Shown here piece by piece: positions 3,885-43,926 of a stretch of DNA of 64,000 nucleotides. The stretch lies in the NCBI GenBank assembly GCA_033442325.1, contig JAWQFM010000015.1, positions 435,735 through 499,734 on the forward strand. The letters run 5' to 3'. A program made the position numbers and the translations under genes. Below the pieces are notes generated by a model. That model ran no database searches, was not told the DNA's origin, and saw only the letters and a program-made list of their open reading frames with translations. Every line of letters begins with the position of its first letter. Position 1 is the stretch's first letter. The DNA comes from Salpingoeca rosetta (taxonomy: Eukaryota > Protista > Choanoflagellata).

Positions 3885-5079
3885 AAGTACACACCCACGT
3901 CTGCTCTCAACCACTCCTCAACCACTCCCCCCCCCTTTACCACGGCAGGGCACGGACGTTGCCTCATTTGAAAAGTTGACGTCGCTGACATCGGAACGCG
4001 ACCGTCTGCGCCGGCAGCTTGTCGAGATGGAGACGGACAACGCGGACCTCAAGGGCCAGATGGCACGTGTCTCAAAACTCCTCCAGGTCAGCCTCGTGTC
4101 GAGCAATGTGTCATCATCAACAAACGCACCCCCCCCCCCACACACACACACATCAAAACATCAACACACGAACCTGCTGCTTGTCATCTCACTCACTCAC
4201 TCACGCACACACACGCACACACTGTTTTGTTTTCTTCTCCCCACACACCGCTCCATCCATCCTTGCCACAGGACGCCGGTGTGCAGAGTCCGTTTGAGGT
4301 TGGCGCGACCATCGCCGCCCTGCGTGAGAGGAGCAGCGAGCTGGAGAAGCAGCTGGAGAAATTGTCCGCCACGGCCTCGTCGTCGTCGTCACTGGCCGCT
4401 GCTGAGGATGTGCACACGGGCGAATTCACAGTCAAGGTGGGGCAACATCGCAGTGTAATTGTGTGTGTCTGTCTGTCTGTTTGCCTGTCTGTCTGTCTGT
4501 TTGCCTGCCTGTCTGTCTGTCTGTCTACTTGTGTGGGTGGTTGCTTGGTTATTGTGAATCACGGTCGTTTAAATGTTGTCCATTCGCAGTTGTCCTTTCA
4601 AACACACGCACACTCACATGTGCACACTGTGTCCGCCAACACCATCAGATCCAGGCGCTGGAGCAACACGTGCAGCTGCTGAAGAAACAGAATGAGGAGC
4701 TGCGACAGGCGCGCCACGATGCAACATCCAGCAACACGCGTGCACTCCAGGCTGCAAAGGCCGCAGCGAGCGACGCGCAAGAAAAGCTTCACGCCCTGCA
4801 GATGCAATACGACAGCGCCCAGCGTGAGCTTCGGGCTGCCATGGCAGAACGCGATGCAACAGTTGCGGATATGAAGCGAACGCTCGAGAAGGAGCGCGCT
4901 GAACACAAACGCGCACTCGACGGCCATAAGGACAGTGGCGACGCAGCCAAGGTGTGGCTTACGTGCATATGTATGTGTGTATGTGTGAACATGTACTTGT
5001 GAATGTGTTTGTGTGTGTGTATGCCTCTGTGTGTGTGTGTGTGTTTGTGTGTGTGTATGCCTGTGTGTGTGTGTGTGTG

Positions 5080-5132
<53 letters not shown>

Positions 5133-6539
5133 GTGTGCGTGTGTGTGTGTGTGTACAGCGTTGTTGTGCCTCGGCTTCCACAAGTGCTTGACCAGTGTTT
5201 TCCCATCCACCCATACACCCCCTCCCCCAAACTGACATTTCGCTCTCCCAACCCGACCCATCACATCCCACCCCGTACTGCCCCTCCCTGCAACAGCTGC
5301 GCGTGCTTGAGGCGGAGGTGTCGTCGCTGCGCACCCAGCACGAAATGGCCAAGGCGAACCTCGACCGCGCCCACCGCGATCTTAAGACCGCACAGGAGGA
5401 GCACGCGCGTGCACTCGATGAGGAGCGCAAGAGAACGGCTGCAGTGCAATCACAACTGGACGCCCTGCTTGCATCACGGGACGCCGATGGCAAACACAAC
5501 AGCAGCAGCAGCAGCAGTGGCGACGGAGAAATGCGTGACGCGGAGGCGACGGCAACAGCTGATGCCCTTCGCCTGGAGGTGCAGCATCTGCGCACAACTG
5601 CAGAGGAAACAGAGGCAAGACTGCAGGCGGACCTCACACGTGCACGTGCGGACGTTCAACAAGAGCGGGATGAGGTGTCACGCTTGACAGCTGAGGTGCA
5701 AACGCTGCAGACGAAACTGCAGCAGGCAGACGACGCGCGCACAGCCGCCGAGCAGCGCGAACGGGAGCACAACGCCAAGCTGGCCACCACCGCCACTGCC
5801 ACTACAACAGCACCGACAGCAGCGCCGGCGACAAGTGCCGCTGATGAGGCGGAACTGAAGCGCCTGCGTACAGAGCTGGACAGCGCAACACGTGCTGTTG
5901 AGAGCAGCAAGGCAGAGACAGCGCGGCTGCGGCTGCAAGTCGAGGCACTCACGCGCGACAAGGCGGCATGGGCCAGCAAGGAGGCGAGCCTGCAGGCAAA
6001 GGTGGGGCAGCTCGAGCAGAGCTCGTCACGCCTGCAACGCGACTTGCAAGCACGTGACGCCAGCGTGCGGGAGCTGGAGCAGCGTGTCAAGTCACTCACA
6101 GCACAGCTGCAACAGTCGCGCACAGCAGCAGCAGCAACAGCAACGGCAGCACGGCGAAGCAGCCTCTCTGCCACGACGTCATCTGACGTGGGCGCCCGCA
6201 GCGCTGCAGTGGCGGAGATGGAAACGGCGCTGGCGGCCATGAAGCGCGAGAAACTCTCGCTTGAGGAGAAGGTCGCCAAGCTGGAGAGCCAGGTATCATG
6301 TGTGTGTGTGTCTGTGTGTGTGTGTGTTCTGTTTGCTTGCATCTTTGGCTGCGATTGAGCTTCATTGACTCCGCTTCTCACACCGACCCACACGCACACA
6401 TGCACACACCCTCAAATGGTTACGCGAGCAGGTGAAGGAACAATCTGAGGACCTTGAGGATCTTGAGGAGATGCTGGCTGGGGAGCGGCAGGCGGCGGCG
6501 CGCCTGAAGCAGCAGCTCGCCGGCCAAACATCCGCGTGA
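504..6539 (+). CDS. CAP-Gly domain, long coiled-coil protein (CLIP-170/Tip1-like), ~1126 aa, 14 coding exons
   Basis: Exons 504-1022, 1183-1297, 1499-1680, 1878-1976, 2196-2281, 2505-2640, 2947-3333, 3485-3589, 3716-3757, 3949-4086, 4272-4436, 4649-4951, 5297-6292, 6432-6539; all GT-AG and phase-consistent. S/R-rich N-terminus, then CAP-Gly ([55 protein letters not shown]), then E/Q/K/A-rich coiled coil. Confidence 0.85.
2737..2940 (+). repeat. (CACT)n tetranucleotide tract immediately upstream of a 3' splice site
   Basis: Directly visible; a similar tract lies at ~27940-28018. Confidence 0.9.
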
Positions 6540-7012
6540 CGAGCAAACTTGGGATGAAGTCACACAAGGCACTGTGTTGTGTTGTGTGTGTGTGTGTGTG
6601 CTTGCGAGGTTGTGACTGCTGTGAGCATTCATCAATATTCGTTGGCTGTTGGAGTGCACGTGTCTTTTGTGTCCATCGTCCATTGCGTCTTGCGTATTGC
6701 GTTTGCACTCGACATTGTGATGTTGTGCTTTTGGGTGCTGTGTGTGCTTCTTGACCTGACCCTTCTGCTGCCTGTGTATGTGTGGGATATGGCTGGTTTG
6801 ATTGATGCATTTTATGCCTGTATTGCCTGCTTGTGTATGTTAACATCTTCCCCTTCTCTGTGCCCCATAGATTAAATGACTCGCGTGGAAGCCATGTGCA
6901 TGTACATAACAACAACAGCGTACGCTGTGCCAACTCCCGCTCTCGGTCCTGCTGGCTTGCTTGCTTCGGCGCTCGCTGTGGTTGTGTTGCCTGCAAGCAA
7001 CGCACGTTGTTA

Positions 7013-7214
7013 TTATGCCTTGCGCCAGCGCCCCGCTCCTGCTACGCGACACGCCCCGTCCAACTCAGCCACCACGGCTTTCAGGGCATTGCGCAGAGAG
7101 GGAATGTCCACGTCAAACGAGTTGCACACCACCCAGTCCCGCCCGGCCACCTTCACCTCCCGTCGACACGTGCTCGTGTCGCACTGCACATTGCGAGAGA
7201 GGGAGAGAGAGAGA

Positions 7215-7257
<43 letters not shown>

Positions 7258-10138
7258 GTTTGTGGGTGTCAAGTTGTAAGAACGCGAGCGCGGAACTGAT
7301 TGTGGACAGAATACATTGGCAGTAGCTGGTGTGTTTATGGGTTTTCAGCCTATACACGAGAGGCAAACAACAATAAAAGTTACTCACACACATGCACACA
7401 CACACACACACATGCACACACATACATACACGTGCACACACATACACGCGCGTACAGCCGATCCAAAGCCCTGACCTCTTGTTTCAAACGCTGGCGCTCC
7501 TTTTCTGCGCATTCGAGTGTGGCGCCACATTCCATCGCCGCCATGGATGCCTTCCGTAACTGATTGTGCTGCGCGGTGTTTGCACGCTGGCGAATGCACC
7601 CAGATCTGCCAGCAATCGTGAGCGTGGGATGCGAAACGAAAGTAGGGTTTGTTCAAGGCGTGTGATTGCAGGCCAAGTTAATGCTGCGCAACATCAATCA
7701 TCGCATGCTATTCACACCCCTATGTCACACACGCACACACACCACATACATCACACACACGCACGAAAGAAACTATTGCTCACAGGTTTGAGGCGCCAAA
7801 GGCGAAGCGGTAGTGGATGTTGAAGTTGGCGGCAGCTTGGGCAAAGTGCGAATTGAAGATAACGGGCACAGCCTCCACAACAGCAGAGTTGGGGTGCATC
7901 CACGCCATGCCAAACACCTGCGAGCTGTGGCTGCTGATCACAAGCCCTGCGTCGCGGAACACAGCTGCCTGGTCGTACAGTGACGTGCTCTCGTTGGTGG
8001 TGGCGACAGTCGCAGCGATGCCCGTGATGGCCTTCGCCGTGGCTTGCACCGCGTCCATGTTGCTGAACCGTCGCAACTTGTGCCCGGTGCTGCGCTGGAG
8101 AATGACAACGCGCCGTGGTGGACACGCCCCGTCGGCCCATTTGTCTGTGTTTGCGAACATGAAGTCCACTGCGCGGCGGTGAAACATGCCTGCATGCACC
8201 TGCATGGCAGCAATGTAGGCGGGGGAAGCAGGAAAGGAGATTGGGTTACGCGTTCATTATGATGCACGCTTATCTGTGAGCAATCTGCAACGTCCTTGCT
8301 AAGCATGTTGCACACACAAAATGGAAAGAAAACGCCAGGGAACATGCATACACACGCACATGTACAGTGTACACACAAACACGCACACACATGCATACAC
8401 ACGCACACACACACACACACGCACGCACGCACGCACGCACGCACACGCACACGCACACACACACACACACGCACGCACACGCACGCACACACCTTGTTGT
8501 GTCCAAACAGGTCGTATTCGGGGTGATACGCCACAAGGCTGTGGAAGAACCGCGGACGATTGTCATCGATGTCAACGTTGTTGATGCGGTCATGACGAGA
8601 CCCCTCATCGCCAGGGAACAGCGCAGTTTGTCGAAAGTCTGAACGCGCGCATTGTGCATGTGTGTGTGTGTGAAAAGTCGAACTGGAAGCAAGCAAGTAA
8701 CCCTCATTTCGAGTTCAAGTTCAACCCACCCAACATCGTTTTGTCTCACCTAGTCCTGTTTGAAAGCGAGCATTGTGTGTGTCTTTGAACCACATGGCGT
8801 AGTACTTCTCTTGCCAGGCATTCAGGGAAGCGGCCTTGAAGAACGACACGTGCCCGAACGGTGGTAGTGTGGCTGGATTGGGATTGAAGCAGGTACAGGA
8901 TATGAGAACACGTGTGAGAAGCGAGAAGAGGGTAAAGCAGACACGAGACAACGCGGCGACAGTGCATGACACACACACACACATACATGTGCATACTCAC
9001 ACACATACAAACACACACGCACATACAAACACACACGCACATACAAACACACACACATACAAACACACACACACATACACATGCACACTCACACACGCAC
9101 ACACAAAACACACAAACAAACAAACACACACAAGCGCGCGCCATCCACCCCCCCCCCCCCTCCCTAATGTATACCTTTGTGTTGGTGGAGAAGCGTTGGT
9201 AGGGCGGAGAGTTGGATGGATTCGTGAAAGATGTGTGGTGGCTGCGACCAACGCTCCACGCCAAGGGTGGGCGCAAGCACCCCAAAGTCCTTTCCGTCGC
9301 ACTTCGGAGACCACAGCTCCGCTGGAGTCGTAAACACGGGGACACGAAAGGCGTGAAAGCAGGAACAGAAGAGCTGTACCTTGGAGGATGGCACCAGCCG
9401 CTGCGCTGTCCACGCTGATGGATCGTAAGGCTGTTGCATCTTCGCAGACCGCACAGTAAAGCATGCCACGGCCAACTGCCTTGCGTCATCCAGCATTTCC
9501 TCGGGAACAACCAAGACGGTGCGGTATTGGTCCACCACTGCGTTCGTGAACACACACGCGCCATCACCCGACACCCACATCCCAGACGCAAACTGCGGTG
9601 CTGCTGTCGGAACCAGCTCTTCCTGCTCCAGCTGCTGCTCGCGGCGCTGTGTGCGGCCGGCTTCCTCCTCTGGTTCCTTCTCCTTCGCTTCCAGCAGCTG
9701 CTGTTTTGGAATGTCAGCTTGAGCACCGGTGCTTTTGGTCTGCGCAATGGGTGGCAGGACTTGCGTGAACCTGTCCCCAGTGCTTTCGGTGCTTGTTCCA
9801 GCCCGGTCGAGGAGGTGGCTGCCAAGTGTGGTGATTTGCTCGGCAAAGCGGGTGCCGGCATGCACGCACTGCTGGAGATGACGCAAGTACTTGGCCTTGC
9901 TCTTCCCTTTGTCCTTGCATGCCTTGACTGATGTCCGTCCCAGCACGTCGTCAAACATGGGACGCTCAAACTGAACTCTCTGGTGCGTTGTGCCCAAAGA
10001 ACCCGTGTTTCCGAGGACTCCAACAACGGCTCCAGGCCACGAAGCAGGCGTCATGTTTGTCAGCACCACCGTCACCAACAAAAGCTGAACCATCATCACA
10101 CCACAGCGCTGCTGTCTCCTCCTGGCCATCTCCGCCAT
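7013..10138 (-). CDS. Glycosyltransferase family 61 (DUF563; EOGT/POMGNT2-like), ~649 aa, N-terminal signal/anchor
   Basis: Exons 10138-9175, 8872-8750, 8638-8493, 8199-7784, 7605-7476, 7183-7013; phase-consistent. Hydrophobic N-terminus after RRR. GT61-like segments: [65 protein letters not shown]. Confidence 0.75.
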
Positions 10139-31401: not shown

Positions 31402-38082
<6,681 letters not shown>

Positions 38083-38759
38083 TTGTTGTTTTACATCGAC
38101 ACGACACATGCGTTCATGTGCTGTGCCGTGCTGTGATTGATTTTGTGCAATGTGTGCCGTTCCTGGTCGCACTCAAGCACACACACACACACGGCTTTAA
38201 CTTCTCATCGTTTCCTCGGTGTTGTTCTTGAGTTTGTGCCCTTGCGTTGGGGGATATGAACAGACGTCCAAGTAAGGCAAGAATGAGAGAGAGACCAAGT
38301 GAAACGAAATGACACGAGCATGCTGCATGCAGACAAACATCAGTTCTGATAGGATCCCAAAAAGAAAGAAAGAGGAGGGAAGATGAGCGTTCAAATAATG
38401 AAATAGCAAATCAGGCTGTCAATACGAGGCGCGGTGGAAGGGACACCGCGTTGGAGTGTCGCTTCGTTCGCTCCTTATGGCTTTCCTGGTCCCCATTATC
38501 GCTGTCAATTGCATGGCCCATCCAACCTGAAGCACCACAACGCACACACTCTCCAGTTCGCATCGTTGCAGCATACAGCACTTTTGACAACCCCCCCCCT
38601 CTCTTGCGCATGCGCATCACATAGCCACACTATCCGACATCAACCCTACATCCACGATTCGTCATCCTTCCACATCAACAGCAATCAATCCAACGCTTAC
38701 AACACACACACACACACACGCAACACACGCAACACACGCGCCACACACCCCACATGGCG

Positions 38760-40578
38760 TTATGATTGCGATTGGGACTGGGCAGAGGCGGCGAGCATCT
38801 CCTCCTCGCAGTCGCTCAGTTGCTTCTGCAGCAGCGTCTTCACGCGAATCCCGCACGAGATGAGCGCATCCAGCGCACGCCGGCCCTTGGCCAGTGTGGC
38901 CGCACTCGGCGCGTCGCGCCCTTCGCACCACGACTCGTACACCCGCAGCGCATGCACCACAGCCGTGTGCACGTCACCGCGACCAGACACGCCAATGTCG
39001 TCCGTGTCCCGCGCGTGTGTCGCTTCCGTCATCGTGCCGCTCGCATACGTGCACAGGTCGCGAAGCGCAGAGTCGAGCACGGTGATGCTTGCACGCAGCA
39101 CGCTCCGGTCCACCTGCAGGTACGTCGTCGGCTCGTCCACCTGCGACAGGCCCAACCGTGATGTGCACTTGGCGGAGAGCGGCTTGTGCATGAGGTGTTC
39201 GTACAGGAGTTTGACGACCGTCAAGCCCGCCATGGATTGGAGCGCCTCCTGCACCACTGCCGGCTGAAGAATCGTCAGCACGCGCCTGTCCTTCCCTTCC
39301 GTCAGCGCAAGCGTGAGAGGGCGCACACCGCGGTTGTCGGCAGGGTTTGTGCGCGCCCCACTGGCCACCAGCAGCCGCACCACCACCGCCTTGCCGCGCT
39401 GGCACGCCAGATGCAGTGCCGTGCGCCCATCGAGCGGCGACGCCCAGTCGACGCTTGCACCAGCTTGCAGCAGCAGCGCAACCACGCGCGGGTGGGCCTT
39501 GGTCACCGCAATGTGCAGGGGGCGCGTCGCCCGTTCTGCAACGAGGCGCGGCTTGCCGGGCGAGATGAGCACATCCGCGCACGCGTTGGGGTCGGCACCA
39601 GAGGACAGCAGCAGCTGCACCATCTCCTCCTCGTTGCAGGCAACGGCCGTCATGAGCGGGGTGCGTCGCAGCGTGTCGTTTGTGGCGTCGGGCACGTGCC
39701 CAGCAGCCAGCATCAGCGTTGCACAGGGCACATGCCCCTTCTCGCAGCACCAGTGCAGCAGGTCAGCCGCCATCTCCCTGTTCTCGCGCAGACCGCACTT
39801 GACGGGGCCAACGCTGGAGTGGGACAGGGCGAGGTGCGCTGTGTCGCAGTCACCGCGCAGTGCCGCTTGGGTAAACGCCGCCTGCATTGCGCCGGGCACG
39901 CGCGCAACGAGATCAACCATGTGTGGGTCGCCCGTGATAATGCGGTTGAAATCACGCACGACACGTTTACTGCGCGCCGCTGCGGTGGCCAGGGCAGCGG
40001 CTGTGCCCTCGAGATGCGGGGGATCTGCACCCGCGCGAAGCAGCAGCACGAGCGCAAAAAAGTTGCCGTTCTGCTGGGCAAGCGTGGCTGGCGTGTCCAG
40101 GCTGGCGTGGCTGCAGGAGAGGAGGTGGTAGGCGCATGTGAGATAGCTGTTCTTGCGGACGGCGATGCGCAGCGAGTTGTAAGCTGCCGTCTCCTTTGCC
40201 CGCCACACCTGCTCCTGGCTCGCCACGTGCCTGCCGCGCTCCTCGCAGCCAAGCGCGCCCTTTTCCGCGCCGCAGCACGACCACCGCTGCAGGGTGGACT
40301 GGACATCCACCTGCGTGGCGTTGCACGACACGCGCACGCTGGTCTCGCCGGCAAGCTGGCCCGGGTGCACGAAGCACGAGCCGTCCATGTTGTCGCTCTC
40401 GAAGAAAGGATCCTTGCAGGCGGTGCAGTGGAGCCTGACGTGTCGCCAGCTGGTCGGCGCATCTGGTGACTCTGGCTGCAGGTGTCGCTTCACGGTCGAG
40501 GGCACGCTGATCTGGAACTCCACAAGCAAGTCGCCGTGTGTGTGCGTGAGCTTCTCAAAGTCACTCGCAGTCATGCGC

Positions 40579-40616
<38 letters not shown>

Positions 40617-42383
40617 CGTCTTGTCGTTACTTCTGGCGTTGTTACTGCTGCTGCTGCTGCTGCTGGTGGTGGTGGTGTTGTTGTTGTTGTTGTTGTTGTT
40701 GTGGTGGTGGGTCCCATCATGGTGTTGCGGCTGTTCTGCCTCCTTTGCTTCGTGTTGTGTCGACTGCGCTGCTGCTGTTGGTGTTGAAGTGCATGGCATG
40801 CCAAGACCAGGGATGGTGACAACCTGTCCTGGCATGACGCTGTCCATGGGGAGGTGGTGCGTGCCACCGGTGATGGTGGGGATGTCTGTGGTGTGCCCAA
40901 ACAGCGCGCCAAGCAGCGGCACGCGCACCAGCACGTGAAGGTCGGCCCCTTGTCGACGGAACACGCTGTGCGGCTGCTCCTGCAGTGTGATGATGACGGG
41001 AAAGGGGTCTTCGCCGTACAAGTGGTTGCCGGCGCCGGCGAACGTGATCTGCGTGCCGTCCTCGTACCCGGCCTGCGCTTCCACCGTTAGCACAATCTGC
41101 TCCGTGTCAAACGTGCCGGGTGACACCTCCACATACCGCGTGGTCTTGAGCCGCTTCACAAACCCGTTGTACAGCTCCTCAAGCGTGACGGGCAGCGTCT
41201 TGTAGCTTGGCCCCGGCGTCACATGCGCGTGCTCTGCTGCACTAGCTGTGTCATGCGCTGTTGGTGTGCTGGAGGCGTGGTGGTGGAGGTGTTGGTCTTC
41301 GGGCCGACTGTCGTGTGTCGGTGGTGCTGCGTGTGGTGTGGCTGAGACGGGAGTGTAGGGGCATGTGGGCGGAGAGAGCGTGGACGACGATGTGGATGGT
41401 GTTGATGCTGACGACGATGAGCTGAACCGCCCAGAGCACGCGCCCGGTGGGGTTGATGGTGGTGGCTGCGCAGGATGTGTTGTGCTGTTGACGCCACCAT
41501 CCCTGCGCGGTGAAGGCTGCTCCGACTTGGGGTGGGGACGAGGCGGTGAGTGTGCATGGCTGGCGGTTGTGGCAGTGGGCCGGTTGTGGCGAAAGCTCTG
41601 GCTGTGTTGTCTCTGTGATGGAGTTGCAGCTGTTGTTGACGGTTGTGGTTGCGGGTGCTGTGTGTGTGTTTGTGGTTGAGGTTGCTGGTGTGTGTGTTTT
41701 TGCTGTGTGCGTGTTTGTGGTTGCGGCTGTGACGCTGATGTGAAAGCGTGTGCGCTGTAGTGCAGGTTGGTGTCGTCGATGAAGCTGTGTCGCACATGTT
41801 CGCGAGAGGGCGGCATCCAATTGCCACCACCTTGCTGTTGCTGTTGCTGTTGTTGTTGTTGGTGTTGGTGTTGGTATGCTTGCTGCTGTTGCCGCCAGCG
41901 ACGCGGGTCACGCATGGAGGTGGCACGTCGCCCAGAAAAGCTGTGGCGCTGCTGCTGGGGATGGTGTTGATGGGTGGCGGCAGCAGCAGCAGTTGCTGTG
42001 AACAAGTGCGTCTCTGGCTCGTGTGGCTGTGTGGGGGATGGCGCGTGTGCATGAGCGTGGGGCCGCGGGCGGGTGTATGACGCCTGCAGTTTGAGCGTGA
42101 GCAAGGCGTCCTGGAGGTTGAAGTCTGCGCGGTCGAAGAGCGGGTTGCTGATGATGTCTTCGACGGAGGCGTAGAGACCGTTGTCGTACACCTGTTTCCT
42201 GACGGGGTGCGAGAGCACTTGGAAGGCCTGCTTTGCCTCATGGAACTTGTCTGCGGCCTCCTTTGTGTTGTTTTTGTCTGGGTGCCATTTGAGGGCCTGA
42301 GCGCGGTAAGCGCGACGCAGCGCGTCCTCCGACGCTGCCGCCTCTGCCGCGCTGATCCCCAGCACAGCATACAGGTCTTTCAT
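38760..42383 (-). CDS. Single-coding-exon 1207-aa protein: J domain + low-complexity linker + DnaJ C-terminal domain + CHORD/Btk-like Zn module + ankyrin repeats
   Basis: J domain: [38 protein letters not shown]. DnaJ_C: [38 protein letters not shown]. Ankyrins: [31 protein letters not shown]. The upstream part of the track ORF (42827-42384) looks like a 5'-UTR intron (AG 4 nt before ATG; candidate donor ~42839). Confidence 0.85.
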
Positions 42384-42556
42384 CGTTCTGCGTTTGTGTG
42401 TGTATGCAAGAGAGAGGGTGTTTGTGTGTTTGTGTGTGTTTGTGTACGTGTGTGTGTGTGTGTGTGTGCGTGCGTGAAATCGAGTGTGTATGTATGTGTG
42501 AGGCAGGGCGTGTGTGTGTGTGTGCGTGAAATCGAGTGTGTATGTGTGTGTGGGAC

Positions 42557-42595
<39 letters not shown>

Positions 42596-43926
42596 TGTGA
42601 TACGTATTGAGCGATGGACGGGGTGGTTGGTTGGATATGGATTGGGTTTGTTGGCGATGGCTGATGTGGGTGCGTGTGTGCGTGTGTGCAGGTGTGCGTG
42701 TCACCGACAAAAGCGCAAAAGCCACCAACCAACCAACCAAACAAGAAGCAAGCAAGCAAGCCACCAGCCAAAGAAGCACACAGCCAAAGCAAGCCAGCCA
42801 GCCAGTGCTGGTGGTGATGCACCCCACGACGACCGTTACCGGGGAACAAGGTGCGTTGACAGGCCACGCACGCCCAACACTTTCAACACCCGCACCTTCT
42901 TTGCTTCTTCGCTGTTGTTGGCTTGGCGATGAACGTGGATGTTGGTGAATGCCTCAGCGTGGTGGGTATGTCCAGAGCAAAGCGGTGATGATGGGGCACA
43001 TGCACGAACACCTCACCCAAGCACAACCAACACTCTCTGCAGCGGAGCGAGGGCTGGCTGGGTTGGTGGTGGTGGCGGTGGCGGTGGGAGTGTTTTGCGT
43101 GGTGATGAGTGACCGTTGTGCCTGCTTCGGCTTCTTTGTGGCACGAACACTCTGTTGCTTGACGAACAACAACAACGTTGGCAGCCTTCGAGTTTCAAGG
43201 CGGCGCCATTCAGTGGCGTACGGTGCAGGAATGTGACTTCAGACTGAAATCAGTCTTCAAGGTCATCGCATATAGCTACACCTTGTGGTGTTGGATACAG
43301 TACAGTAATCGACACCACAAAACGGGGTGTGCCACACCTGCCTGGAAAGAATTTTCCCTCAGTCTATTTTGCGTGCATGCACGACGCCCTGGTGATCAGC
43401 GCCTGGGTTTTTTTTCTCTCTGCGGTGGCTCGCGTGGTTGCTTCGCTTCTCTGCCTTTTTTGTATTGTGTTGTTGCGCATTTCCCTTCCCCTCCTTGTTC
43501 CGCGTCTCAGGTTGGTTGATGTTTGCTTTGCTTATGGCATCAACGTGGTGCACGCTTGTGCGGGTTGATGGCGCTGCATGTGGGTGGGGGTGTTGGTCTG
43601 TGTGGGTGGGGGTGGGTGTGTGCGTGCGTGCGTGAAGGGCGGGGAAGAAGAGACAGGCGCGCGCTCCCTCGCTGCGTTGCGAAAGAGGGAAGATGGGCGT
43701 GCATGCTGCGTGCGTGGTTGGCAATGAACACGAGAAGACCCCGTCGCGCATTCTCATCTCACTTTCTCTTGCTTGTTGTTGCTTGTTGCTGCTCCCATTC
43801 GCTGTTGTTCCTTTTTCGCTGTTCTCGTTGTTGTTCTCTTGCGTGACATCCTCCTCTCTCTGTCTGTGATTTAGTCTCCCAAGGACCACACAGCAAACAA
43901 ACCAACAACCAACCAATCAACCAGCC

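What the first reader, a model, noticed from the sequence alone, without database searches (positions are those of the whole stretch)
38760..42383. J-domain co-chaperone fused to a CHORD/Btk-like Zn module and ankyrin repeats
Seen: intact HPD J domain and DnaJ_C, then [23 protein letters not shown]-x22[20 protein letters not shown] (~40430-40225) and at least four ankyrin repeats. Known: CHORD domains (RAR1, CHORDC1, melusin) follow C..C..F..N..CxYHPG..FH..WSCC..GC..GRH and bind Hsp90; the Btk motif shares HPG..WxCC..GC. The FH histidine of CHORD is absent here. Inference: one polypeptide that could couple Hsp70 activation, client binding, Hsp90 contact and an ankyrin adaptor surface. I do not know this architecture from any described Hsp40.
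Basis: partly seen in the sequence, partly recalled or inferred. Interest (0 to 1): 0.75.

Follow-up and report, generated by a model that had tools for sequence, protein, structure and literature searches.

The report
J-protein with divergent CHORD-like zinc module
A choanoflagellate gene really does encode one expressed 1207-residue Hsp70 co-chaperone that joins a J domain and client-binding domain to a two-zinc CHORD-fold module and an ankyrin platform, but the zinc module has lost the residues that canonical CHORD domains use to bind Hsp90.

Summary
One ORF (42383..38760, minus strand, 1207 aa) carries a Pfam J domain with HPD, a class-B DnaJ_C domain, a Cys/His module (aa 653-719) and ankyrin repeats.

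- **One transcript.** Stranded RNA-seq covers the whole CDS with no splice joint. A sister-species transcript and four metagenomic genes share the same domain order.
- **CHORD-fold relative.** Pfam CHORD misses the module and BTK is sub-threshold. A 58-copy family profile hits human CHORDC1 (E 8e-8) and RAR1 CHORD-II (6.5e-5). An AlphaFold model (pLDDT 88.5) matches only those two structures. All eight zinc ligands are conserved.
- **Hsp90 contact not supported.** The missing "FH" histidine is not a zinc ligand. In RAR1 it touches the ADP bound to Hsp90. It, its partner acidic residue, the phenylalanine and the whole Hsp90-contacting helix are absent here, yet present in the genome's own canonical CHORD gene.
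- **A generic module.** It belongs to a pan-eukaryotic family found beside SAM, LysM/UBA, PITH, glutaredoxin and exonuclease domains.

My reading is a lineage-restricted, specialised class-B-like J-protein. Its ankyrin and C-terminal helical platform selects partners for Hsp70, and the zinc module acts as a structural or interaction joint. This is a new variant of a known kind, of moderate interest.

The parts
42896..43000 (-). 5' UTR exon 1. Its 3' end is at 42896; its 5' end was not determined and may lie beyond 43000.
   Evidence: Same-strand RNA depth of 8-27 in bin 42853-43000. A loose end at 42896 reads on into the first bases of exon 2.
42388..42895 (-). 5' UTR intron, GT..AG, 508 nt. 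It contains the spurious in-frame upstream extension of the ORF.
   Evidence: RNA depth is about 0 across 42382-42852 in three runs. GT is at 42895-42894 and AG at 42389-42388. Three bridging reads, in run X20 only.
38760..42383 (-). CDS of the 1207-aa J-domain protein, stop codon included. It lies in a single exon.
   Evidence: Continuous stranded RNA cover with no joint on the sense strand. Identical to P0001.
42183..42377 (-). J domain, aa 3-67. HPD at aa 34-36 = 42276-42284.
   Evidence: Pfam PF00226, 63.3 bits, model positions 1-63 of 63. HPD position.
41214..42182 (-). Disordered linker rich in P/Q/S/A/T/H, aa 68-390. It is not G/F-rich (G 2.8%, F 2.5%).
   Evidence: Composition. Length varies between orthologues.
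40788..41198 (-). DnaJ_C (CTD-I and most of CTD-II), aa 396-532, class-B type.
   Evidence: Pfam PF01556, 88.6 bits. PDB: RSP16 at 5e-24 and DNAJB1 at 2e-23. Foldseek TM 0.8 to DNAJB1/Sis1 CTDs.
40536..40787 (-). Low-complexity S/T/N/H insert inside CTD-II, aa 533-616.
   Evidence: pLDDT about 32. Absent from the orthologues.
40494..40535 (-). Last beta-strand of CTD-II (GDLLVEFQI...), aa 617-630.
   Evidence: G617, D618, L619, F623 and I625 invariant in three orthologues; G617 and L619 in all six. Strand at model 232-239 with pLDDT about 91. It ties the two sides of the insert into one polypeptide.
40227..40427 (-). Divergent CHORD-fold two-zinc module, aa 653-719. Pattern: C-x2-C-x13-C-x2-H-x29-CC-x8-C-x5-H.
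   Evidence: Profile versus PDB: 2yrt at 8.4e-8 and 2xcm_E at 6.5e-5. Model pLDDT 88.5. Foldseek prob 1.00 and 0.98 to 2yrt and 2xcm. VIA-align's only hit is 2xcm_F, Z 5.4.
39300..40217 (-). Ankyrin-type helical-repeat solenoid, aa 723-1028. Pfam recognises aa 839-1016 (39336-39869); the earlier repeats are degenerate.
   Evidence: Pfam Ank, Ank_2, Ank_4. AF2 helix pairs run without a break from the residue after the module. DARPin and ankyrin matches.
38763..39287 (-). Conserved helical C-terminal domain of unknown family, aa 1033-1207.
   Evidence: Conserved blocks in six orthologues. Long helices with pLDDT 80-90. No Pfam or PDB sequence match.

Best explanation
This is an expressed gene of a choanoflagellate. 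An earlier scan note names the organism Salpingoeca rosetta. The gene has a single coding exon and encodes a specialised Hsp70 co-chaperone.

Shown:
- A complete J domain with HPD.
- A long disordered linker.
- A class-B type client- and EEVD-binding CTD-I/II.
- A single two-zinc module of the CHORD fold.
- An ankyrin-type solenoid that starts directly after the module.
- A conserved helical C-terminal domain.

Inferred:
- The J domain stimulates Hsp70 ATP hydrolysis.
- The ankyrin and C-terminal platform binds a specific partner or site, so that Hsp70 is delivered there.
- The zinc module is a rigid structural or interaction joint between the CTD and the solenoid. It takes the place of the usual free C-terminal end of class-B J-proteins.
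- The module is not a canonical Hsp90-N binder.
For: - **Domains:**
- **One mRNA:** stranded RNA-seq depth of about 7-60 across 38300-42381 in three runs, with no sense-strand joint inside the CDS. The Trinity transcript of S. infusionum has the same order. Metagenomic P0003, P0122 (J domain in the ORF just upstream), P0123 and P0127 are co-linear.
- **CHORD homology:**. Eight ligands conserved. They map one-to-one onto the RAR1 ligands C159, C164, C178, H218 and H181, C196, C197, C213 (PMC2935968).
- **Loss of Hsp90 determinants:**, set against the canonical gene.
- **Generic use of the module:** it occurs with SAM, LysM/UBA, PITH, HAD, glutaredoxin, BTB-SANBR and RNase_T domains. Rex3/REXO1 is a published precedent for a single CHORD outside Hsp90 co-chaperones (PMC12129344).
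- **Solenoid position:** it begins at the residue after the last zinc ligand.
Against: - There are no functional data. Zinc binding, Hsp70 stimulation, partners and oligomeric state are all untested.
- Domain packing could not be read, because no PAE or coordinates were returned.
- Reads are masked over the low-complexity stretches 40570-40715 and 41824-41883. Continuity there rests on equal depth on both sides, the open frame, the split CTD-II and the orthologous transcript.
- A non-canonical Hsp90 contact cannot be excluded from sequence.
Confidence: 0.55

Rival explanations
1. One reading: the module is a working CHORD domain that docks on the Hsp90 N domain. One polypeptide would then bridge Hsp70 (J domain), client (CTD), Hsp90 (module) and an ankyrin adaptor.
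For: The module is a true CHORD-fold relative with both zinc sites. Trp701 and a conserved hydrophobic residue after HxG are kept. CHORD domains bind Hsp90-N (PMC2935968).
Against: His188 and Asp189 are invariant or nearly so in CHORDs, and mutating them weakens Hsp90 binding. Their equivalents and Phe187 are absent in all 58 family copies. The helix with E203, F204, D205, F207 and M208 is deleted. The loop that carries the contacts is a 19-40 residue segment, non-conserved even among the six orthologues (the x19 of P0003 is also listed). The genome has a canonical CHORD gene with these features. The family occurs in many contexts unrelated to chaperones.
Confidence: 0.1
2. The module is an oligomerisation or partner-binding element in its own right. 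It might replace the class-B C-terminal dimerisation motif, or bind a CS-domain or other protein. It would then not be a passive joint.
For: It sits about 22 residues after the end of CTD-II, where class-B proteins have their dimerisation helix. Only a 4-residue helix is predicted there. CHORD and Btk-type modules are known protein-interaction modules (PMC2935968). The variable hairpin insert is a plausible specificity loop.
Against: There is no direct evidence. The residues RAR1 uses for Sgt1-CS are specific to plant CHORD-II. The insert is poorly conserved among the orthologues.
Confidence: 0.25
3. Annotation artefact: two neighbouring genes (a J-protein and a zinc/ankyrin protein) read as one ORF, or hidden in-frame introns in the low-complexity stretches.
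For: Reads are masked at 40570-40715 and 41824-41883. The genome has introns.
Against: No stop in 3621 nt. No sense-strand joints were found. Depth is similar on both sides. The CTD-II fold needs the strand downstream of the insert. The same order is seen in a transcript of another species and in four metagenomic genes that lack the inserts.
Confidence: 0.03

Closest known systems
Class B J-domain proteins (DNAJB1/Hdj1, yeast Sis1; axonemal DNAJB13/RSP16)
   Same: An N-terminal J domain with HPD. CTD-I/II without a zinc-finger-like region. CTD E-values of 5e-24 to RSP16 and 2e-23 to DNAJB1, and 1e-11 to Sis1; TM about 0.8.
   Different: There is no G/F-rich region; the linker is 323 aa of P/Q/S/A/T/H. 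A low-complexity insert lies inside CTD-II. About 580 extra C-terminal residues (zinc module, ankyrin solenoid, helical domain) stand where class-B proteins end with a short dimerisation motif.
CHORD domains of RAR1, CHORDC1/Chp1/morgana and melusin (PF04968)
   Same: Two C3H zinc sites in the same order, plus the motifs C-x2-H-P-G, W-S-C-C and G-C-x4/5-H. Best and only structural matches.
   Different: - A single copy, not a tandem pair, with no CS domain.
- No Pfam CHORD hit.
- The H-to-CC loop is 29 residues instead of 14 and lacks F-H-D/E.
- The CC-to-C segment is 8 residues instead of 15, so the Hsp90-contacting helix is missing.
Btk motif of Tec-family kinases (PF00779)
   Same: H-P-G ... 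W-x-C-C-x8/9-G-C. The short CC-to-C spacing is Btk-like. From my memory of the Btk PH-TH structure, the ligands are H143, C154, C155 and C165; I did not check this here. Ten of 52 family members hit PF00779.
   Different: This copy scores 12.5 bits against a cut-off of 24. ITK scores E 0.12 with the family profile. There is no preceding PH domain. It has a second, N-lobe zinc site that Btk motifs lack.
Single CHORD domain of Rex3/REXO1 exonucleases
   Same: A lone, divergent CHORD-fold module found by structure comparison. It sits directly upstream of another folded domain, outside the Hsp90 co-chaperone context (PMC12129344). RNase_T proteins are among the structural neighbours.
   Different: The partner domains differ (KIX and DEDDh). 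I made no direct sequence comparison here.
Skd3/ANKCLP (ankyrin repeats fused to a ClpB-type AAA+ chaperone, holozoan origin)
   Same: An analogy only: a chaperone-system component that gained an ankyrin adaptor in the lineage of choanoflagellates and animals (PMC4339202).
   Different: An unrelated chaperone module. No homology is claimed.

Membership tests
J-domain protein (PF00226) | J domain above the Pfam cut-off with an intact HPD tripeptide | tested here: met
   63.3 bits against a cut-off of 27.8, model positions 1-63 of 63. HPD at aa 34-36. H34, P35 and D36 are invariant in three orthologues.
Class B J-domain protein | CTD-I/II (DnaJ_C) without the CxxCxGxG zinc-finger-like region | tested here: met
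   PF01556 at 88.6 bits. Best PDB matches are DNAJB1, RSP16 and Sis1. No CxxCxGxG in the sequence.
Class B J-domain protein | Glycine/phenylalanine-rich region after the J domain | tested here: not met
   The linker aa 68-390 has G 9/323 and F 8/323. It is dominated by P, Q, S, A, T and H.
Class B J-domain protein | C-terminal dimerisation motif right after CTD-II | tested here: inconclusive
   Only a 4-residue helix is predicted after the last strand, followed by coil and the zinc module. No multimer prediction was available.
CHORD (PF04968) | Eight zinc ligands in the order C,C,C,H,C,C,C,H forming two C3H sites | tested here: met
   C653, C656, C670, H673, C703, C704, C713, H719, conserved in 6 orthologues and 58 family copies. 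They map onto the RAR1 ligands. Actual metal binding was not tested.
CHORD (PF04968) | Score above the Pfam gathering threshold | tested here: not met
   No CHORD hit at E<=10 on the isolated module or at E<=1 on the whole protein. The whole-genome scan with PF04968 found the canonical gene on another contig but not this locus.
CHORD (PF04968) | Fold like solved CHORD domains | tested here: met
   Model pLDDT 88.5. Foldseek: 2yrt prob 1.00, TM 0.55/0.57; 2xcm_E prob 0.98; the next hit has prob 0.05. With VIA-align, 2xcm_F (Z 5.4, 60 aligned) is the only one of 48,161 chains at Z>=2. Family profile versus 2yrt: E 8.4e-8 over the whole domain.
CHORD (PF04968) | Invariant His and Asp/Glu (RAR1 H188, D189) and the hydrophobic Hsp90 patch (A185, F187, W194, F204, F207, M208) | tested here: not met
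   Only the Trp is kept, and the A185 position holds a conserved Leu. No [FYW]H[DE] in any of 58 copies. The helix segment is deleted. The canonical gene of the same genome keeps APVFHEG and EFDEFL.
CHORD (PF04968) | Tandem pair of CHORDs, associated with a CS domain or with Sgt1 | tested here: not met
   One module in the protein, and one copy of this family in the genome. No CS domain in Pfam.
CHORD (PF04968) | Binds the Hsp90 N domain in a nucleotide-dependent way | not testable with these tools
   Needs pull-down or ITC, or a multimer prediction with a positive control.
BTK motif (PF00779) | Score above the Pfam gathering threshold | tested here: not met
   12.5 bits against a cut-off of 24, E 0.14, covering only aa 700-715.
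BTK motif (PF00779) | Follows a PH domain | tested here: not met
   No PH domain in Pfam. The module follows DnaJ_C.
Ankyrin repeat proteins (PF00023/PF12796) | Repeats above the Pfam cut-offs | tested here: met
   Ank 84.8 bits in 4 stretches; Ank_2 96.8 bits. Helix-pair solenoid across aa 723-1028 in the model.

The most novel reading that the evidence does not exclude
The module, despite lacking the canonical contacts, still docks Hsp90 or another GHKL/ATPase chaperone through its elongated hairpin. This choanoflagellate protein would then be a single-chain Hsp70-to-Hsp90 hand-over factor with a built-in ankyrin client adaptor. The wider family would be an unrecognised class of CHORD/Btk-intermediate chaperone-docking modules across eukaryotes.
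Probability: 0.08. Interest if true: 0.75.

Novelty: new variant of a known kind. Interest (0 to 1): 0.45.

Why it matters
J-domain proteins give Hsp70 its specificity. Most specialised ones add a single targeting domain. This one keeps a full class-B client-binding unit and adds a zinc module, an ankyrin solenoid and an unknown helical domain.

It is restricted to choanoflagellate-like organisms, the closest living relatives of animals. It therefore offers a tractable example of how chaperone targeting was diversified near the origin of animals.

The work also shows that the Cys/His module is one copy of a pan-eukaryotic, two-zinc, CHORD-fold family. The Pfam CHORD and BTK models largely miss it. 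Its spacing lies between CHORD and the Btk motif. That is useful for annotation and for understanding how the two motifs are related.

Finally, it corrects a tempting inference: a CHORD-like pattern does not imply Hsp90 binding when the nucleotide-contacting His/Asp and the contact helix are gone.

Tried and rejected
- **Pfam on the module:** scans of the whole protein and of the isolated module gave no CHORD hit, and BTK only at E 0.14 ([wrong frame], 9).
- **Slips corrected:** one search failed on an out-of-frame reference. One search used wrongly guessed orthologue coordinates; both were corrected.
- **Three-sequence profile:** it reached RAR1 only at E 0.0057. The 58-copy profile was needed. 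Its C2H2 zinc-finger hits cover only the CxxC...H half (positions 3-30), so I set them aside.
- **PF26782 (DUF8254):** the Atlas names it for some family clusters, but it is not in the local Pfam copy and could not be tested.
- **C-terminal domain:** no Pfam, PDB-sequence or Atlas lead.
- **Large model:** a Foldseek search returned only the expected DnaJ_C and ankyrin matches.
- **P0003 contig:** its DNA could not be fetched.
- **The search of earlier findings by words:** failed once, then returned nothing.
- **Literature:** a search for a described J-domain/ankyrin protein in choanoflagellates found none.
- **Not available:** model coordinates were not returned, so zinc-site geometry and domain packing could not be measured.
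- **Exons kept apart:** the exons of the canonical CHORD gene were translated separately by reference and were not joined.
Full report
**What is there**

The window has the composition and gene structure of an intron-bearing eukaryote. The genome is 55 Mb in 68 contigs. That fits the nearest orthologue, a Salpingoeca infusionum transcript.

The longest ORF at the site runs 42827..38760 on the minus strand. The protein starts at the ATG at 42383. Translation gives 1207 residues, identical to a protein already held in public collections (P0001).

Pfam finds:
- a complete J domain, aa 3-67, with HPD at 34-36;
- DnaJ_C, aa 396-532;
- four ankyrin stretches.

The quoted Cys/His string is at aa 653-719, window 40427..40227. 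Its spacer is 24 residues, not 22.

**One gene, one transcript**

Three stranded RNA-seq runs cover 38300-42381 continuously on the sense orientation. There is no splice joint inside the CDS. Depth falls to about zero at 42382-42852.

A loose end at 42896 reads on into the bases just upstream of the ATG. The genome shows GT at 42895 and AG at 42388. So there is a 508-nt intron in the 5' UTR, and the upstream in-frame extension of the ORF is intronic. The bridging reads number only three, in one run.

Reads are masked over two low-complexity stretches, so continuity there is indirect. It rests on equal depth on both sides, the open frame, and a structural argument. The last beta-strand of CTD-II (aa 617-630) lies downstream of the S/T/N-rich insert. 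It is modelled into the CTD-II sheet at pLDDT about 91.

Independent support comes from relatives:
- A Trinity transcript of S. infusionum has the same domain order.
- Four metagenomic proteins (P0003, P0122, P0123, P0127) are co-linear from the CTD to the C-terminus and lack the inserts.
- For P0122, the J domain lies in the ORF called immediately upstream on the same contig.

**The J-protein part**

The CTD matches Chlamydomonas RSP16 and human DNAJB1 at about 1e-23, and Sis1 at 1e-11. TM is about 0.8 to DNAJB1 and Sis1 CTD structures. This is the class-B type without a zinc-finger-like region. The linker after the J domain is 323 residues of P/Q/S/A/T/H, with only 2.8% G and 2.5% F. The G/F criterion of class B is therefore not met.

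**The Cys/His module**

The Pfam CHORD model does not see it. BTK scores 12.5 bits (E 0.14), on the W-S-C-C...G-C half only.

A profile of three orthologous modules, searched against 1.84 billion representative proteins, found 55 proteins. Besides the six J-proteins, these include:
- a Chromera SAM protein with two copies;
- ascomycete and plant hypothetical proteins;
- LysM/UBA, PITH and HAD proteins.

An alignment of 58 copies (A5) has C, C, C, H, C, C, C invariant and the last H at >=90%. The pattern is C-x2-C-x13-C-x2-H-x10..58-CC-x8/9-C-x4/5-H.

Evidence that this is a CHORD-fold relative:
- The A5 profile hits the CHORD domain of human CHORDC1 (2yrt) at E 8.4e-8, from the second Cys to the last His. 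It hits RAR1 CHORD-II (2xcm_E) at 6.5e-5. The ITK Btk motif scores 0.12.
- An AlphaFold model built with A5 has mean pLDDT 88.5.
- Foldseek ranks 2yrt (prob 1.00, TM 0.55/0.57) and 2xcm_E (prob 0.98) first. Every other hit is at prob <=0.05.
- An all-against-representatives structural search finds 2xcm_F (Z 5.4, 60 residues aligned) as the only one of 48,161 chains with Z>=2.

**Why Hsp90 docking is unlikely**

The RAR1-Hsp90-Sgt1 structure paper (PMC2935968) gives the zinc ligands as C159, C164, C178, H218 and H181, C196, C197, C213. These map one-to-one on C653, C656, C670, H719 and H673, C703, C704, C713. It is not a zinc ligand. [quoted passage not shown] Both are reported as very strongly conserved in CHORDs (His188 invariant), and their mutation weakens binding.

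The hydrophobic Hsp90 patch is A185, F187, W194, F204, F207 and M208, with R190, R192, E203 and D205. In the present module:
- only the Trp is kept, and the A185 position holds a conserved Leu;
- the loop that should carry F-H-D is a 19-40 residue hairpin, non-conserved even among the six orthologues (the x19 of P0003 also);
- none of the 58 family copies has an aromatic-H-D/E triad there;
- the segment that forms the E203-M208 helix is deleted, giving CC-x8-C instead of CC-x15-C. That is the Btk-like spacing.

The same genome has a canonical two-CHORD gene on another contig. I translated its exons separately, by reference, and did not join them. They keep APVFHEG and EFDEFL. The J-protein locus is the only copy of the divergent family in the genome.

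Structural neighbours in the ESM Atlas carry the module beside glutaredoxin, BTB-SANBR, RNase_T, TIR and CHORD contexts. A single divergent CHORD has also been described in Rex3/REXO1 (PMC12129344). Together these point to a generic two-zinc scaffold, not an Hsp90-specific device.

**The C-terminal half**

In a model of aa 388-1207 (mean pLDDT 77.6), helix pairs begin three residues after the last zinc ligand. They run to about aa 1028. The ankyrin solenoid is therefore longer than the four repeats Pfam recognises, and the module sits at its N-terminal end. Residues 1033-1207 form long helices with conserved blocks in all six orthologues. They have no Pfam or PDB sequence relative.

**Most likely mechanism**

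- *Shown:* the domain inventory, expression, and conservation of the order of domains.
- *Inferred from what is established for J domains and class-B CTDs:* the HPD J domain triggers Hsp70 ATP hydrolysis, and the CTD binds client and the Hsp70 EEVD tail.
- *Inferred from architecture:* the ankyrin and helical platform gives partner or site specificity, and the zinc module is a rigid joint or an interaction element between the CTD and the solenoid.

I put about 0.55 on this reading. I put 0.25 on the module being an active oligomerisation or partner-binding element.

**Novelty**

The protein model is already in databases. I found no paper describing a J-domain/CTD/CHORD-like/ankyrin protein. 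Only six such proteins appeared among 1.84 billion representatives. It is a new variant of a known kind: a specialised J-domain protein. A side result is a pan-eukaryotic CHORD/Btk-intermediate module family. Some of its clusters may overlap Pfam DUF8254, which I could not test.

Read laying was given 4701 letters.

Noticed in passing
window 42388-42895 (minus strand): A 508-nt GT..AG intron in the 5' UTR of the J-protein gene. The 148-codon in-frame upstream extension of the ORF (to 42827) lies inside it and is not transcribed sequence. Exon 1 (>=42896) holds a short upstream ORF that starts near 43002 and ends in TGA.
   Followed up: partly
alignment A5 (proteins P0121-P0172): A pan-eukaryotic family of single or double two-zinc modules, C-x2-C-x13-C-x2-H-x10..58-CC-x8/9-C-x4/5-H. 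It is found in plants, fungi, Chromera, haptophytes and rotifers. Members stand alone (80-140 aa) or sit beside SAM, LysM/UBA, PITH, HAD, glutaredoxin, BTB-SANBR and RNase_T domains. Pfam CHORD and BTK mostly miss it.
   Followed up: partly
G000:C9:1086016-1087780 (loci L001-L004): The canonical two-CHORD gene of the same genome. Each CHORD domain is split by an intron. CHORD-II keeps the Hsp90-contact motifs APVFHEG and EFDEFL.
   Followed up: partly
L018:4910-8309: On a 13-kb metagenomic contig, the gene caller split an orthologue into a J-domain ORF (4910-5908) and a DnaJ_C-module-ankyrin ORF (5913-8309) in another frame. This is probably one gene with a small intron or an assembly frameshift.
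   Followed up: partly
window 36946-38230 and 42400-42830: (CA)n/(TG)n microsatellite-rich intergenic or intronic DNA flanks the gene. It yields long spurious T-H-T-H and C-V-C-V ORFs on both strands. The only joint reported (41678 to 42665, antisense reads with GT-repeat filler) looks like a repeat artefact.
   Followed up: no
P0133 (532 aa, metagenomic): A protein with eight matched stretches to the module profile and a strong Pfam BTK hit (8.5e-15, three stretches). It appears to be an array of Btk-like zinc knuckles without a PH domain.
   Followed up: no
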